NCBI GenBank assembly: GCA_964188305.1
Contig: OZ076885.1
DNA length: 64,000 bases
Reading direction: 5' to 3' (one strand)
Origin: Podarcis bocagei
Taxonomy: Eukaryota
The notes under the pieces are model-generated. The model was not told the DNA's origin. It was given only the letters and a program-made list of their open reading frames with translations, and did no database searches. Made by a program: the position numbers and the translations under genes. Below are positions 1 to 37,922 of this stretch, one piece after another (position 1 is the stretch's first letter; the number at the start of each line of letters is the position of its first letter).

Positions 1-3000
1 GGCTATGCAAGGCTACCAGTAGTGTTGTTGAAACTTGGCATGTCTCTCACCTGCTTCCTTCCACATTTAGCCTGTTACCATGTTGTGTTCCCATAAAATG
101 TTGTAAAAATTTGTCCCCTCCTCCATCTACAAACCATGGGGGCATCTTTCTTCTCTCTGGTCTCCTACTTTTTACATTCTTTTTTTACATTCAGACCTTG
201 TAATACTTCCTCCAAAATTAATGCACAGGCTTTGTATCTTCTTCCTAATTACCTCACATGGTCATTTGTGAGTATAAAATGGGGGTATGTTCCTTTGAGC
301 CCCTTGTTGGAGGAAAGGTGGGTGATAAATGAAGTAGAAAAATCTATTTTCTTTTTTTAAAAAAGCACTGAACACTGCAGAAACCTTATATACCTTTCTC
401 CCTCAGTCCACCCAACACACAAATTGCAGTATGCCCCACAAAACTCTACCGTGGCCCTCTTAAGTTATGTTTTCCCATTGAATTGTTTTAGAGGCTTTTG
501 GAAAGAATTTCTTGCACATTAAGTTAGAGATGAAAGGGCTTCTACCAGGCACACATAATTTATTGGCTCTTTGTTTTAGGTACCCAGGTCCTACTTTTAG
601 GCGCAGAGTAAGGCAGCCACTTCAGGTAGTTGGTTTTTGGATGTATTGAAAACGCAGCGGATTGTAGGTATTTAATATATTGTTATATTTCCACTCACGC
701 GAGTCACGTTTGTGCTGCCAAAATAACTCGGCAAGCACTATGCATCTTGGGTGCTTTGTTCAGCCTTCAGGCAGCAAAATGTCTTGGGCCAGTCCTGCAG
801 ATGCCCAGTACTCCCTGTTCTTAGAGAGCAGTGTCTCTCTCACCTGCCTATGTAAACACATTTCTGAATAAGCTTGGAGTCCTCCAGGGCACGTCTTTGA
901 CTTTATGCAACCTGTCCCACTCCAGATTGTCTCCGGAGCCTCTTGATAGCAGTCTCCCCTTGTTCCAGTTCTGAGCTCTAGGTCCTGGGATGGTTGCTCC
1001 AGTTGTCCACTGCTCCCCTACCTCCTCCTACAATCTACGCAATTCCGAAGCCATATGTGAAAGCTTTCACGTTAATTTGGAAAAGTGTGGATAACTGTGT
1101 AGCTCATACTGCTCAAGGAAAATGTCTACACTTCAAATATGACATTCTTTAAACACAGCCAGTGAACGGCTGCCAAAACTTTAAAAGTTCAAAAACCAGA
1201 TGTTTCTGGGGTTTGTGATCCTTTACCAGGTGAATGACCACAGGAGGTTCTTCTTGGGGAGCCATGACAGCACTTGCTTCCATCATAATCTACAAGCCTG
1301 TACCCTTGGGCCATATTGCTATGTTTTTTATCTTCTCATCATGTTTGCCATAAAGAGAGCCAGTATCTTAAGAGATGCCGTCTGAGACAGAGCAGCTGTT
1401 TGCTTAGTAGGTGAGCCTGTCTGGACTGCATTTGTCTGTTCTTATTAAACCTCGAAGCAGCTGATGTTTTGGCAGAGCTGATATTTTCGCCTTGGATTAC
1501 TCTGTCTGATGTGGATGTTGGCTGATGTAGTTCCATCCCAAGATATTTTGGAAGCGTTAATCAGAGCAGGAAGCATTGTAATACATTATCTATTTATGGT
1601 TTAATGCAGGATGAATCTTTATCCAGAATTTAATGAATTGTCCTGAGAGAGGCAAAACCTATTTCAACGTACAAAATACACCCGCTCTTCTAGTTGCTTA
1701 AGATACCTTTATGTTGCGCCAAGGGGCTTTTATCCTATAGATTCATCCTATTATGGACTTTCTTGGTCAAATGTGTCAGCCCAATATTAGGTCTGGCTAC
1801 CTAATGAACAGAGGTCAGGAATGTGCTGAGCAAAGTTATATCCCGATCATAAAGAATGTTGTGAAAGGAAATAAGACACTCTGTTTCCAGGTAAGTATGT
1901 AGATACTGCCCTCTTGGCAATGCCTGTTGCTGCCTTTCGATCCTGCACAAAACTGACTTGAGGACAGGCTCAAGTGAGTAGCCATGAAACTTGCTGGGTG
2001 GCCTGTGTCTCAGCTTAACATCCTCTGCAGGGTGGCTGTGAGGATAAAATGGAGCAGGGAGGAGAACCATGTATGGCAACTTGAGTTCTTTGGAAGAAAG
2101 GTGGCATCTACATTGACATACTCGATAAGTATCTGAATAGAGGTGGTTAACTCATTTTACCTTTCAAATCCTGGCTGTGGCATCTTCAGCTGTGCTGGGA
2201 GTTTGTATGTTTTTTGCTACATACTGGAATGCAAGGAATGTTCTTTATAAAGAATTCAGCAATTGCATGGAACTGTGTCACTCTTATTGCTTGATTTTCA
2301 TTTGTTGTGATAAGGGTGAACTGTTGACTTTTCATAAACTGTACAATACTTTTTCCAGTGCATGGGAAGAAGTAATGGGTGTATTAATTGTTCGTCAACA
2401 GTGAATCTGAAGAACATGATAGGATTGCCACCTTGCAGGCCTGGATGCGTACCTTAAAAAAAAAATCAAAAATTCCCAGTACAATGAGAGAACGTAGCTG
2501 TGTCTTCTCTCTTCTGTTCTCTTCCCTGGTTCTGATGTCTCTGCCTGTTTTGCCCTGGTATCTCACCCACCACAGCAGCCGATGGCAGGACCAGGATAAG
2601 AATAGGTGGGATATACAGGGGTTTAAAGGCAACTGAACTAGAAAATATGTCTGTTTTACATATTTAAAAAATGTGCATTTCCTGTTTTGAAGGCAGGAAG
2701 GTAATAAGTAGCAGACAGCTCACTGAGTTTTGGATCTGATTTGTCTTTTGTGGAATTCCAGAAATATGCTGGAGTTGGATGGGTGGCAGTGGACTGACCT
2801 TACAGCTGGGATCAATTAATTCCCCTCTTAACCACCCCCTTCTCTCTCTCTCATATATGAGTGTAGAGAGGGGGAATGGGAAGATGTTTTCCCTTTTGCC
2901 ACGATTATATCCTAGGAAATTGAAGGTGTTCCAACTTAAATTTCATTTTAAAATCCTGTAAAATGTTTGTGGCTTAGACTTTGTCTGCAGTCCTAACCCC

Positions 3001-32270: not shown

Positions 32271-32331
32271 GGCACCTCAGAAAAAAATATCAAGTAGTCT
32301 TGAAGACTTGCAAAGTGAATCCTTGGAAAAG
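32271..32331 (+). CDS. PPFIBP2: PPFIBP2 exon, APQKKISSSLEDLQSESLEK (2/0)
   Basis: ttaag|G...AAG|gttggc, 61 nt; human AQKKLSCSLEDLRSESVDK. Confidence 0.93.
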
Positions 32332-33453: not shown

Positions 33454-33495
33454 CATGTAGATGCGAAACCAGTAGAACGTGATGTAGCACAAGAG
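33454..33495 (+). CDS. PPFIBP2: PPFIBP2 42-nt exon, HVDAKPVERDVAQE (0/0)
   Basis: catag|CAT...GAG|gtatat; same 14-aa length as the recalled human segment CMDGNQPFPVLEPK. Confidence 0.8.
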
Positions 33496-34380: not shown

Positions 34381-34531
34381 AATAAGCCATTCGTGAAAAG
34401 CAGCAAATACCAAACCTTGCCAGGGAAGCTTCCTCGACCTGCACACAACGGCGATAGTGGGGCGTACAGTACTCCTTCTCCAAGTACGTGCCGTGTGAAT
34501 GGCAACGGAGACAACAGCATACAGAGCCTGA
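34381..34531 (+). CDS. PPFIBP2: PPFIBP2 exon, NKPFVKSSKYQTLPGKLPRPAHNG...NSIQSL (0/1)
   Basis: acag|AAT...CTGA|gtacgt, 151 nt; conserved KYxTLPGKL. Confidence 0.9.
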
Positions 34532-34607
34532 GTACGTACTTCAGGGAGGAGAACAATAAAAGCATGCCTCCGTGTGATATGCAGCTTGGGTTTTAGCTAC
34601 TTAATAG

Positions 34608-35842
34608 CAGTCAGTCAGTCAATTTTATTGTATATCGCAAAAGGCCTTTACAATGGAGGACAGAGAATTTAAGGAAAACTTTCATCTAAAATCATACAAC
34701 ATAACCTGAAGCAGTTTACAACATAAAAAGAAATTCACAACATTAAAATTTAAGATTCACATAGCTGGAATGGAGCTTCTTGGCTGCCAGCGCAAATTTG
34801 GCTTCCTGGTGTGTAATATATAGGTGTTTATCTGCTAGGAATTCAACTGTCACTTCCTGTGCAGATTGACCTGGAAGCCAATTAAGAATTGGCGATATAA
34901 ATTTCCTCTGGGCGTTGTATACAGGGGGCAAATCAGCAGGGAGTGTGTAATGTCTTCTGCCTGAATGCATCCGTATATACATTTGCAATCCTTATAGGGA
35001 ATTCCCCAATCAATCCCCTCTAAATATGCTGAGGGCATCTGTTGGAATTTTATTTCTACAAAGGCCCTCCATAGTTGTGGGTAGGTCAGTGTCTCAAGGT
35101 GATTGGTCTTAAATTTGGGGGTACCAAGTAGAGTAATAGGTAGCAATGATGGATATTCTGTCTTGGTTGGCATCCTGATCAAAAATCCAATTTCTAAGGT
35201 CACGTGGGCCAAAGGCTAAGTAGTTCTCCATTTGAAGACTATAAGCCCTAAGCTTATCTTGGCACTTCTGTGCCCAGTCCCCAGTCCTTAGTTGCTCTGA
35301 CCAGCAGAGCTTAGTGAGAGTGTGTTCCTCGAAGGCATTTAGCCTGCTCCACTATCTCAGATAGGCTAGATCAATTCTGGCTGCTAGCGAGGGGATGCCC
35401 AACTCAGCTCTGACGTGGGCTGCCGATGTCCCGCAGGAAAGCTCCAAATCTGCCTGTAGGACCTCTATTTCAGATTTAATACCAATTCCCCATATTTCAG
35501 CTCCACAGAGCAGTTGGACGATGATTTTAGAGACAAGGATCTTAAAAGCTGGCTTGATTAACTGCCCACCCTTTGAATGAAAGAACCCGTATAGCTGCCC
35601 AGTAGAATGGCCAGATATTAGCTTAATGGCTTCCAGATGGGGTTTCCATGATGACTTGCCATCGATAAGTAACCCTAGATATTTAAATCTGGGTACTTGC
35701 TTTAGGGTGTTACCGTCTAGAGTCCACCTGGACTTGGTAGTCCTCTTGCCAAATAAAGTGACCTTGGTTTTATAGTAGTTAATGTTTAGATGCTCTTTTT
35801 TACACAGCTGTCCAAATTTAACCAGCATCCTTCTAAGCACAT
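34608..35842 (-). mobile_element. 5'-truncated non-LTR retrotransposon (RT thumb, CCHC finger, 3' UTR, (TGAC)n tail; clade uncertain, RTE-X-like)
   Basis: ORF 35352-35840 has LNINYYKTKV...QVPRFKYLG...W.PHL...VRAELG; downstream frames give CKCIYGC...EDITHSLLICPLYTTPR; minus-strand end AATAAAattgactgactgac; frameshifted. Confidence 0.85.
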
Positions 35843-36821
35843 AGTATGATGCTTTGCTAAATTAAAGGAGGAAACCTGTTTCCACCTACTAGAAGGTGGA
35901 AAGTTGGATTTCCAAGTAGCTTAGACCCCAGGACTCTGCTTGGTCATGTTTAATGTGAGCCATTACAACAACTGGGATGTACAGAATATGGAATTTTGTT
36001 TACCCCTGCAAAGACTACTGTTAGACAATTTGCAGGGGAGGCTGAAATTCCACATGCCGAATGCTCTGTGGGCATGGCTTCATCTAGGCTAGCAGCTACC
36101 ATGCTTGGCAAGGCTGTGTAAAGGGAAAACCTGTCCCTAAGCATGTCTGCTTGGGACTAAGCTCCATTAAATACAGTGGAACATCAGATAATGGACCTTG
36201 CACATCTGTCTGCAACCATTACCTTTTGATATTGGAGCCCCGGAAAGAAGTAGACTACATGCATATGTCTACTGCTTTAATTACAGTGTGTTAAGATGCT
36301 CCTTTTAAATATCCTAGACAATTTAAAATATTAAGTAATAGTTTCAAACCCTAGACTTCCCTGGGGAAAGCAAAGTTCTCTGGTAGCTCTCTATAAATCA
36401 AGCTGGTAATTGAGTCTAAAGCGGAGTTTTGATTTGTTTTTTGTAAAAAGAAACATCAAACATCAACTACATATTACTGGGATTTATTTTGTGTTTAAGT
36501 GGGAACAGCCTGCATTTTATTCCTATTTTCTTTTTCACTTAGGAGTGTTCCATATGGAAAGCAATTTTTTTTAACTGCATAATACATTGTGGATCCTTTT
36601 TTTAAAAAAAATTACAGGTCTCACTTTAGAATATTTTGAACTATAGACAGCAGGCCCCAAATGTTCAACTTCATCTGCTTTGTTACTTTTGCTTCTTGTC
36701 AATTTTTTATTTCCTGCTTTTGGCTTTTGGCTTTCTTTGCTTTTCTGTAACTTTCCTTTGCTTGAATTTCCCATCGTCTTTGCTTCTTCATGTGGCTTTC
36801 TGGTTCTTGGAATGATTGAAG

Positions 36822-36854
36822 ATCGCATCAGGAGTGTCAGTGCACCAATCTTAG
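36822..36854 (+). CDS. PPFIBP2: PPFIBP2 33-nt microexon, (N)RIRSVSAPIL(G) (1/1)
   Basis: gaag|AT...TTAG|gtatcg; first AG after a ~165-nt AG-free pyrimidine tract; resembles recalled PPFIBP1 KRTASAPNL. Confidence 0.8.
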   Translation: MASGVSVHQS

Positions 36855-37622
36855 GTATCGTACACCTAGTCCATGCACAGCTTTTAAGCTAGGAATGAAT
36901 TGCGGGGGGAGTCCCCCGTTACTTCTTGAATTGTACATAGTGGACTGTCTGAAATCTTGATTTTTTTACACTGAAAGGGAAGAGCCCAATTTAGCTCCTA
37001 GTAAATGAAATGTAGACAGACAGTGCTAGACTTCAATCTCTGAACTAGAACAGAGATTCAATATAGTGGTTGATTCTAATTGGAGCTAGACATCTATTAC
37101 TTTGGAAGCAAAATTCATATATTGGAAAGGGGGGGTTAATGTGGCTCCTTATTTAACCATTTTTTAAAATACAAAAACCTTCCTAAATTTATTTTGGCAA
37201 TAATGTTTTAACATAGGCACCCACAATAATCTTAGAAATTCAACTGCCATACTTTTTTCAGAAGGATGTAATTTTCAATCCTATATTCATATTACAAATA
37301 AGATGAATGTTATTAATCGGTAGTTTTCTGGTAAACCTGACAATTTTATAATGTGATTGCAGAAATCTTTAGCTAGATCTTCCAGTCTTTATATGTTTTG
37401 ATACATTCCGGGGGGAAGTCCTCTAACTAGTAATAAAAAATGCAATTTCTAAGTCTGAGAAAAATCACGGACCATTATTTCAGGAATGTTGCCGAGTAAA
37501 ATCGGAAGTACTTAGCACTATATGATTTAAGATGTTTTGGGGATTATGAATTTTTGTGAAGTTTTTCCTTTTGCATTTTATACCATGGCTTCATAAATCT
37601 CAATGGCATTTATCAATCACAG

Positions 37623-37761
37623 GGGACTCTGACAATATGGATGGTACAATGAATTCAGATGACCTTTCACCTTTGTCATCGGGAACAGAATCTGGTGCAC
37701 AGTCTCCATTATCTCCGGAAAATAAAAGAAGTCCAAGAGGAATAAAGAAAATATGGGGAAA
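37623..37761 (+). CDS. PPFIBP2: PPFIBP2 exon, DSDNMDGTMNSDDLSPLSSGTESGAQSPLSPENKRSPRGIKKIWG(K) (1/2)
   Basis: cacag|GG...GGAAA|gtgagt, 139 nt. Confidence 0.94.
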
Positions 37762-37922
37762 GTGAGTTTTTTCAATCTTCTGTATCTTTTTTTTTTTAAT
37801 GCCACTACAGAGAACTAACTAGAAGCATTCCTGCTATCTTGAAAGTTCTTGTGTTTTTATGTTAAAGCTGCACCTTGCATTTTGATGTCTAGCAACTTCC
37901 TATTTTGAATCTTTCCAAAAAG

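What the first reader, a model, noticed from the sequence alone, without database searches (positions are those of the whole stretch)
36822..36854. Microexon that inserts a complete Akt/14-3-3-type phospho-motif (RIRSVSAP)
Seen: a 33-nt symmetric exon encoding N-R-I-R-S-V-S-A-P-I-L. Established: RxRxxS is the Akt/RSK/SGK consensus and RSxpSxP is the mode-1 14-3-3 motif; both converge on the same serine. The recalled human canonical liprin-beta-2 lacks this segment, while PPFIBP1 has KRTASAPNL in its linker. Inference: splicing switches kinase-dependent 14-3-3 binding of liprin-beta-2 on or off.
Basis: partly seen in the sequence, partly recalled or inferred. Interest (0 to 1): 0.75.

Follow-up and report, generated by a model that had tools for sequence, protein, structure and literature searches.

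The report
Liprin-beta-2 phospho-motif microexon, real and conserved
A 33-base alternatively spliced exon of the lizard liprin-beta-2 gene is real and is conserved from fish to mammals; it inserts a short peptide that looks like a kinase-controlled docking site for 14-3-3 proteins, but that binding has not been tested.

Summary
The segment 36822-36854 is a 33-nt cassette exon flanked by AG and GT. It lies in frame between PPFIBP2 (liprin-beta-2) exons 34381-34531 and 37623-37764 and encodes N-RIRSVSAPIL.

Public RNA data show both forms with exactly the predicted joints:
- One lizard run has contigs for 34531>36822 and 36854>37623 (depth about 76-79).
- Two raw-read RNA runs (25 and 11 junction reads) and a fourth run carry only the skip joint 34531>37623.

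The exon is not new to databases. Gene models include it in birds (NRIRSVSAPVL), platypus, echidna, bats, sea lions and stickleback. A bat genome carries it intact.

The paralog PPFIBP1 has a homologous 33-nt exon (DRSRSASAPTL). By size and position this is most likely the published mammalian "exon 19", which TDP-43 represses; a PPFIBP1 exon activated by RBPMS plus RBFOX2 may be the same one.

Across all copies seen, R(-5), R(-3), S(-2), S(0), A(+1), P(+2) and L(+4) never change, and lizard-bat differences inside these codons are synonymous. That pattern argues for selection on the peptide.

PPFIBP2 lacks the constitutive KRTASAPNL-type copy that other liprin-betas have. Splicing therefore decides whether the protein carries this motif at all.

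Phosphorylation and 14-3-3 binding remain inference. No paper in the searchable library addresses them.

The parts
34381..34531 (+). Constitutive PPFIBP2 linker exon (151 nt, ends in phase 1). It is homologous to the PPFIBP1 exon that ends in KRTASAPNL, but here it has no such motif.
   Evidence: depth, joints; tblastn with bird liprin-beta-2; the paralog exon, 157 nt
36780..36821 (+). Conserved upstream intronic flank. The pyrimidine/UG-rich stretch TTGCTTCTTCATGTGGCTTTCTGGTTCTTGG is followed by a purine-rich, weak 3' splice site region ending in AG.
   Evidence: Alignments A1 and A2. Conserved in bird and bat PPFIBP2 and partly in lizard PPFIBP1.
36822..36854 (+). 33-nt alternative cassette exon encoding (N)RIRSVSAPIL. 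The complete R-x-R-S-x-S-A-P-x-L motif lies inside it.
   Evidence: inclusion and skip joints; orthologous isoforms; codon comparison
36855..36880 (+). Weak donor GTATCG and conserved downstream flank (GTAT.GTA..CC). Unlike the PPFIBP1 copy, it has no GCATG.
37623..37764 (+). Constitutive downstream exon (142 nt) encoding GDSDNMDG...GIKKIWGK.

Best explanation
The segment is a real 33-nt cassette exon of liprin-beta-2 (PPFIBP2), found across vertebrates and included in some samples but not others. It sits in the linker between the coiled coil and the SAM domains, a low-complexity stretch that I take to be disordered. It inserts a self-contained short linear motif, R-x-R-S-x-S-A-P-x-L.

Most likely mechanism (inferred). 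The second serine is phosphorylated by a basophilic AGC-type kinase (Akt, RSK, SGK or S6K class, which require R at -5 and -3). The phosphoserine, with R at -3, S at -2 and P at +2, then docks a 14-3-3 protein, as at the nearly identical BAD Ser136 site.

Why splicing matters here. PPFIBP2 has lost the constitutive KRTASAPNL-type copy that PPFIBP1 and invertebrate liprin-betas carry at the end of the preceding exon. Splicing of this exon therefore decides whether liprin-beta-2 has any such site. In PPFIBP1 the homologous exon adds a second copy 11 residues after the first.

Shown: the exon, its alternative use, its deep conservation and peptide-level selection. Inferred: phosphorylation, the kinase class and 14-3-3 binding.
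For: Exon and alternative use: one search shows both joints, each with GT..AG.

Gene identity: one search gives an exon-by-exon match to bird liprin-beta-2, and a CYB5R-like reading frame lies downstream on the minus strand.

Ortholog conservation:
- Birds: 58 of 119 listed isoforms carry NRIRSVSAP[VA]L and 61 skip it.
- Stickleback isoform X13 has IRCRSASAPAL.
- Platypus and echidna have NRDRSASAPIL, bats NRGRSVSAPVL, and sea lions NRCRSVSAPVL.
- An intact AG/GT-flanked copy lies in a bat genomic intron. The local alignment scores 97 against 25.7 +/- 3.1 for shuffles.

Paralog: lizard PPFIBP1 has a homologous 33-nt exon encoding DRSRSASAPTL, with conserved intron flanks. The form DR[SNG]RSASAP[TI]L is present in all 119 best sauropsid PPFIBP1 hits.

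Selection on the peptide: lizard versus bat shows 5 synonymous changes in codons of fixed residues (4 within the motif plus the junction Asn). The only amino-acid changes are at the two x positions.

Constitutive copy: [KR][ST]xS[AT]PNL ends the preceding exon in PPFIBP1 and in invertebrate liprin-betas, but is absent from PPFIBP2.

Motif precedent: BAD S136, PFRGRSRSAPPNLWA, is tabulated beside known Akt substrates such as FOXO3A, PRAS40, GSK3B and TSC2. 14-3-3 proteins and liprin-beta-1 are both listed among known KANK1 binding partners.
Against: No phosphoproteomic, kinase or 14-3-3 binding data for this serine were found; literature searches returned nothing specific.

A at +1 and L at +4 are invariant, and neither the Akt nor the 14-3-3 consensus explains that. 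This hints at another or an additional reader or kinase.

The tissue of the including sample (X1) is unknown, so no link to any signalling context can be drawn.
Confidence: 0.5

Rival explanations
1. The exon inserts a conserved phospho-regulated or plain linear motif that is read by something other than 14-3-3. It might tune binding to liprin-alpha, KANK or ELKS, change self-association of the linker, or be a site for another basophilic kinase family with a +4 hydrophobic preference. In this reading 14-3-3 is irrelevant.
For: A(+1) and L(+4) are invariant in every copy. The Akt and 14-3-3 mode-1 consensus do not require either residue. The older constitutive copy, KRTASAPNL, has no R at -5, so it is not an RxRxxS site yet keeps SAP.L.
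Against: R(-3), S(-2) and P(+2) around a serine are exactly the 14-3-3 mode-1 positions. The BAD S136 peptide, a classical Akt/14-3-3 site by established knowledge, is almost identical.
Confidence: 0.3
2. The exon is kept for length, spacing or RNA-level reasons such as splicing-regulatory sequence. The peptide motif has no specific function.
For: Intron flanks are also conserved, so some of the constraint acts on RNA.
Against: Changes within the exon are synonymous at the motif residues and non-synonymous only at the x positions. This holds over roughly 300 million years, and also between paralogs whose nucleotides differ at 8 of 33 positions yet keep R.RS.SAP.L.
Confidence: 0.05
3. It is not a functional exon: splicing noise or an assembly artefact in one run.
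For: Only one of the four runs laid shows inclusion, and that run is kept as contigs.
Against: Both inclusion joints carry depth 76-79, comparable with the flanking exon (88). The exon is independently annotated in dozens of species.
Confidence: 0.02

Closest known systems
PPFIBP1 (liprin-beta-1) 33-nt alternative exon ('exon 19' in human; mouse chr6:147016860-147016893)
   Same: It is the paralogous exon. It has the same length (33 nt), the same phase, and the same position between a 157-172-nt exon and a 142-148-nt exon. It carries the same motif, R.RS.SAP.L, and its flanking intron sequence is partly conserved with the PPFIBP2 copy.
   Different: In PPFIBP1 it follows a constitutive KRTASAPNL, so inclusion gives two tandem copies rather than one versus none. 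The lizard PPFIBP1 copy has two overlapping GCATG (RBFOX-type) words just downstream, which the PPFIBP2 copy lacks. Published regulation, namely TDP-43 repression and RBPMS plus RBFOX2 synergy, concerns PPFIBP1 only; for the RBPMS paper the exon's identity was not verified here. The match of the mammalian exon to the lizard one rests on size, phase and position, not on its sequence.
BAD Ser136 (mouse numbering) Akt / 14-3-3 site, RGRSRSAPPNL
   Same: The core is almost the same, R-G-R-S-x-S-A-P. The bat PPFIBP2 exon reads RGRSVSAPVL and the lizard one RIRSVSAPIL.
   Different: It lies in an unrelated protein, is not produced by alternative splicing, and has P-N between P(+2) and L. That BAD pS136 binds 14-3-3 is established knowledge recalled here, not tested.
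Tissue-regulated microexons that insert or remove short linear motifs in scaffold proteins
   Same: It is short, symmetric and conserved. It lies in a linker that I take to be disordered, has a weak donor and a distal pyrimidine tract, and shows switch-like inclusion between samples.
   Different: At 33 nt it is above the strict 3-27-nt definition. The tissue in which it is included and the regulator for the PPFIBP2 copy are both unknown.

Membership tests
Alternative cassette microexon | Short length (up to 51 nt; 27 nt or less in the strict definition) that is a multiple of three | tested here: met
   33 nt, phase 1 to 1. It meets the 51-nt definition but not the 27-nt one.
Alternative cassette microexon | Both inclusion and skipping joints seen in RNA | tested here: met
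   inclusion joints in X1; the skip joint in X23 (25 reads), X24 (11 reads) and X5.
Alternative cassette microexon | Conservation of the exon and flanking intron across species | tested here: met
Alternative cassette microexon | Tissue-specific (neural or muscle) inclusion under a named regulator | not testable with these tools
Regulation is published only for the paralog.
14-3-3 mode-1 binding site (R-S-x-pS/pT-x-P) | Sequence match with R(-3), S(-2), S(0), P(+2) | tested here: met
   RSVSAP in the lizard. These four positions are invariant in all orthologs and paralogs seen.
14-3-3 mode-1 binding site (R-S-x-pS/pT-x-P) | The serine is phosphorylated in cells | not testable with these tools
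   No phosphoproteome data were reachable. Peptide-string searches of papers found nothing.
14-3-3 mode-1 binding site (R-S-x-pS/pT-x-P) | Phospho-dependent physical binding to 14-3-3 | not testable with these tools
   A docking job with the lizard 14-3-3 sigma-like protein gave no verdict. This counts neither for nor against binding.
Akt/AGC kinase consensus R-x-R-x-x-S/T | Arg at -5 and at -3 of the target serine | tested here: met
   RIRSVS in the lizard. Both Arg residues are invariant across PPFIBP2 and PPFIBP1 copies.
Akt/AGC kinase consensus R-x-R-x-x-S/T | Phosphorylation by the kinase | not testable with these tools
   Needs an in vitro kinase assay or inhibitor phosphoproteomics.
Liprin-beta-2 (PPFIBP2) ortholog | Coiled coil plus three SAM domains, colinear with known liprin-beta-2, with CYB5R2 as neighbour | tested here: met
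   colinear exon matches to bird liprin-beta-2 residues 95-999; the best relatives are named liprin-beta-2 or PPFIA binding protein 2 and carry SAM_1, SAM_2 and CC_Liprin_beta domains. The CYB5R-like frame on the minus strand was read by eye only.

The most novel reading that the evidence does not exclude
The two liprin-beta 33-nt exons are an ohnolog-conserved, splicing-gated Akt-type/14-3-3 switch on the cortical liprin/KANK/ELKS scaffold. In liprin-beta-2 the exon supplies the only site. In liprin-beta-1 it turns a single site into a tandem pair. If so, the known mis-splicing of PPFIBP1 exon 19 on TDP-43 loss, and its RBPMS/RBFOX2 control in smooth muscle, would act by changing 14-3-3 engagement.
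Probability: 0.2. Interest if true: 0.7.

Novelty: new member of a known kind. Interest (0 to 1): 0.42.

Why it matters
Liprin-betas are scaffolds of cortical and synaptic adhesion complexes, and how they are regulated is poorly understood.

Splicing papers use the paralogous PPFIBP1 exon as a read-out: TDP-43 loss in ALS/FTLD and inclusion body myositis tissue, and smooth-muscle identity. None of the papers found says what the 11 residues do.

This analysis adds three things:
- The exon exists in both ohnologs, which implies it predates their split.
- Its seven fixed residues form a kinase/14-3-3-type motif that is under peptide-level selection.
- Liprin-beta-2 has no other copy of the motif.

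Together these give a concrete, cheap hypothesis to test with a peptide binding assay, a Ser-to-Ala mutant and plus/minus-exon pull-downs.

The exon itself is already present in automated gene models of many vertebrates. Only the functional reading is new.

Tried and rejected
1. "Mammals lack the exon" (rejected). The first protein search used the platypus skip isoform as query, and none of the 119 mammalian isoforms listed had the motif. This was an artefact: only the top 120 hits are listed, the query was a skip form, and inclusion forms were hidden behind 90%-cluster representatives. Cluster members show inclusion isoforms in platypus, echidna, bats and sea lions, and a bat genome holds the exon intact.

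2. Docking. Complex prediction with the lizard intronless 14-3-3 sigma-like protein (L009:1450-2187:-) and bird liprin-beta-2 residues 520-565 scored 0.04. The tool gave no verdict, so this is not evidence either way.

3. Literature.
- PPFIBP2 plus microexon: 0 papers.
- Peptide strings of the exon: nothing relevant.
- Liprin or PPFIBP1 plus 14-3-3: only interactome lists in the one paper opened.
- PPFIBP2 plus alternative splicing: by their titles and abstracts, nothing about this exon.

4. More mammalian loci. Elephant shrew and golden mole genes are too long to fetch, and several isoforms are not on record.

5. Sequence alone as evidence. The intron holds 75 other open AG..GT candidates, so the call rests on RNA and conservation.

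6. Human sequence.

Full report
**What is in the sequence**

The stretch 36822-36854 is preceded by AG (36820-36821) and followed by GTATCG. The exon upstream ends at 34531 with one base of a split codon (…CTG A, then GTACGT). The exon downstream begins at 37623 (…CAG, then GG GAC TCT).

On sequence alone this would not be convincing. The same intron contains 75 open, symmetric AG..GT candidates of 9-51 nt, three of them 33 nt long.

**Gene identity**

A tblastn of a bird liprin-beta-2 (P0285, Cariama cristata) against the window gives colinear exon matches from residue 95 to the C-terminus. These cover the coiled coil, the linker and the three SAM domains.

A search with the SAM1 exon finds proteins that their sources name liprin-beta-2 or PPFIA binding protein 2. 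A cytochrome-b5-reductase-like frame lies downstream on the minus strand. I read that frame by eye only; earlier notes of the scan call it CYB5R2.

Its PPFIBP1 peptide around the motif is identical to Anolis carolinensis isoforms.

**RNA evidence (laid on window:34300-37800)**

- Runs X23 and X24 are stranded raw-read RNA runs of the same species label. They cover both flanking exons at depth about 15-33. They show only the joint 34531>37623, with 25 and 11 reads and no inclusion reads.
- Run X5 (contigs) also has only the skip joint, at depth 344, with a synonymous G>A at the first base of the downstream exon.
- Run X1 (contigs, a different study) has a contig joining 34531>36822 (GT..AG, depth 76). 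It also has a 1792-nt contig joining the exon's end to 37623 (GT..AG, depth 79, no mismatches in either piece). No skip contig was found in X1.
- The flanking exon contig in X1 has depth 88, so inclusion there is the major form.
- The X1 contig cannot come from the paralog, whose exon differs at 8 of 33 bases.

The exon is therefore real and is used in a switch-like way between samples. The tissues are coded and unknown to me.

**Conservation in orthologs**

- Birds: of 119 listed liprin-beta-2 isoforms, 58 carry NRIRSVSAPVL (or …PAL in ostrich, with H instead of N) and 61 skip it.
- Stickleback: isoform X13 has IRCRSASAPAL at the same place.
- Mammals: my first search suggested absence, but that was an artefact of querying with a skip isoform and seeing only the top 120 cluster representatives.
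- Cluster members show inclusion isoforms in platypus and echidna (NRDRSASAPIL), three bat genera (NRGRSVSAPVL), and sea lions and fur seal (NRCRSVSAPVL).
- Genomic DNA confirms this. The bird locus L007 has the exon at 78517-78549.
- The bat Molossus molossus locus L008 has an intact AG/GT-flanked copy at 87887-87919, inside the corresponding intron.
- The lizard exon plus flanks aligns to the bat intron with score 97, against 25.7 ± 3.1 (maximum 36) for dinucleotide shuffles. For the bird the score is 147 against 28.9 ± 3.7.

**Selection acts on the peptide**

Codon by codon, lizard and bat differ as follows:
- Synonymous: both Arg codons (CGC/CGT and AGG/CGG), Ala (GCA/GCC), Pro (CCA/CCC) and the split Asn codon (AAT/AAC).
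- Amino-acid changes occur only at the two x positions: Ile to Gly at -4 and Ile to Val at +3.

Position -4 takes I, G, C, D, S or N. Position -1 takes V or A. Position +3 takes I, V, A or T.

**The paralog and the origin of the motif**

The lizard's PPFIBP1 gene lies on another contig. It has a 33-nt exon, AT CGC AGT CGA AGT GCA AGT GCA CCC ACC TTA G, encoding DRSRSASAPTL. It is in the same phase, about 2.3 kb upstream of the exon homologous to 37623-37764.

Even the flanking intron is alignable between the paralogs. Upstream, the conserved stretch reads GTGTGG..T.TG.GTT.TT.GGATG..TGAAG. Downstream, it reads GTAT.GTA.ACC.

The inclusion form is present in all 119 best sauropsid PPFIBP1 hits.

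The preceding PPFIBP1 exon ends in KRTASAPNL. The same [KR][ST]xS[AT]PNL ends that exon in fish, hagfish and invertebrate liprin-betas, so it is the ancestral, constitutive copy.

The homologous PPFIBP2 exon (34381-34531) has no such motif in the lizard, bird, platypus, placental or stickleback sequences printed. In liprin-beta-2, therefore, the small exon supplies the only copy. In liprin-beta-1 it adds a second copy 11 residues after the first.

The small exon and the end of the preceding PPFIBP1 exon share GCAAGTGCACC and the final L-plus-G phase. This suggests the small exon arose as a duplicate of that exon end before the two genes separated. That is inference.

**Link to published work**

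The mouse Ppfibp1 exon whose inclusion rises on TDP-43 depletion is chr6:147016860-147016893, which is 33 nt. It lies between exons of 172 and 148 nt. Those sizes match the lizard's 157 and 142 nt in phase and position.

The same paper calls the human exon "exon 19". It reports inclusion of 0.60-0.74 in the four control skeletal muscle samples shown, and altered inclusion in ALS spinal cord.

A PPFIBP1 exon also needs RBPMS plus RBFOX2 together for inclusion in a smooth-muscle splicing study. I did not verify that it is the same exon. The lizard PPFIBP1 copy does have two overlapping GCATG words about 15-25 nt downstream of its donor, and the PPFIBP2 copy has none.

No paper in the searchable library mentions a PPFIBP2 microexon or gives a function for either peptide.

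**How it most likely works**

RIRSVS fits R-x-R-x-x-S, the requirement of Akt, SGK, RSK and S6K. RSVSAP fits the 14-3-3 mode-1 pattern R-S-x-pS-x-P on the same serine. These consensus patterns are established knowledge.

The closest precedent is BAD Ser136, PFRGRSRSAPPNLWA, tabulated beside known Akt substrates. By established knowledge, its phosphorylation creates a 14-3-3 site.

14-3-3 proteins and liprin-beta-1 both appear among known KANK1 binding partners. That is context, not evidence for direct binding.

My estimates:
- The exon is real and under peptide-level selection: about 0.97.
- The serine is a regulated phosphosite: about 0.7.
- It binds 14-3-3: about 0.45.

The invariant A(+1) and L(+4) are not explained by either consensus. 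They keep open a rival in which another reader or kinase is the real partner.

**What failed**

A docking job with the lizard's intronless 14-3-3 sigma-like protein and the bird linker segment gave no verdict. It is not used as evidence.

**Verdict**

The exon itself is already in many automated gene models. What is new is the reading: a motif exon shared by both ohnologs, and the sole copy of the family's conserved motif in liprin-beta-2. The finding is of moderate interest and directly testable.

Noticed in passing
window 33454-33495 (+): A second alternative exon of 42 nt, encoding HVDAKPVERDVAQE. It is joined to 34381 in runs X23, X24 and X5. Run X1 skips it and joins the exon ending at 32331 directly to 34381. 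The sample that includes the 33-nt exon therefore skips this one. The bird isoform P0285 has the same combination.
   Followed up: partly
L005 about 2470-2490 (minus strand), G000:C10: Two overlapping GCATG (RBFOX-type) words lie 15-25 nt downstream of the PPFIBP1 33-nt exon. The PPFIBP2 copy has no GCATG at the corresponding place, which suggests the two paralogous exons are regulated differently.
   Followed up: no
window 34457, 34464, 34514: All or nearly all RNA runs differ from the reference in the upstream exon: G>C (AGT to ACT, Ser to Thr), G>A (synonymous) and A>G (AAC to AGC, Asn to Ser; not seen in X1). These look like differences between individuals or populations. The intronic contigs of X1 and X5 differ from the window by about 1-2%.
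   Followed up: no
window 34534-37575, runs X1 and X5: Contig runs guessed to be RNA cover nearly the whole intron at depth 8-16, beside exon depths of 50-440. This could be unspliced pre-mRNA or some DNA in these libraries. It explains why they 'hold' half of a mostly intronic query.
   Followed up: no
L009 1447-2187 (minus strand), G000:C7: An intronless 246-aa 14-3-3 gene with a full-length Pfam 14-3-3 match. By recall it resembles 14-3-3 sigma (stratifin). The other 14-3-3 genes of the genome match exon by exon.
   Followed up: partly
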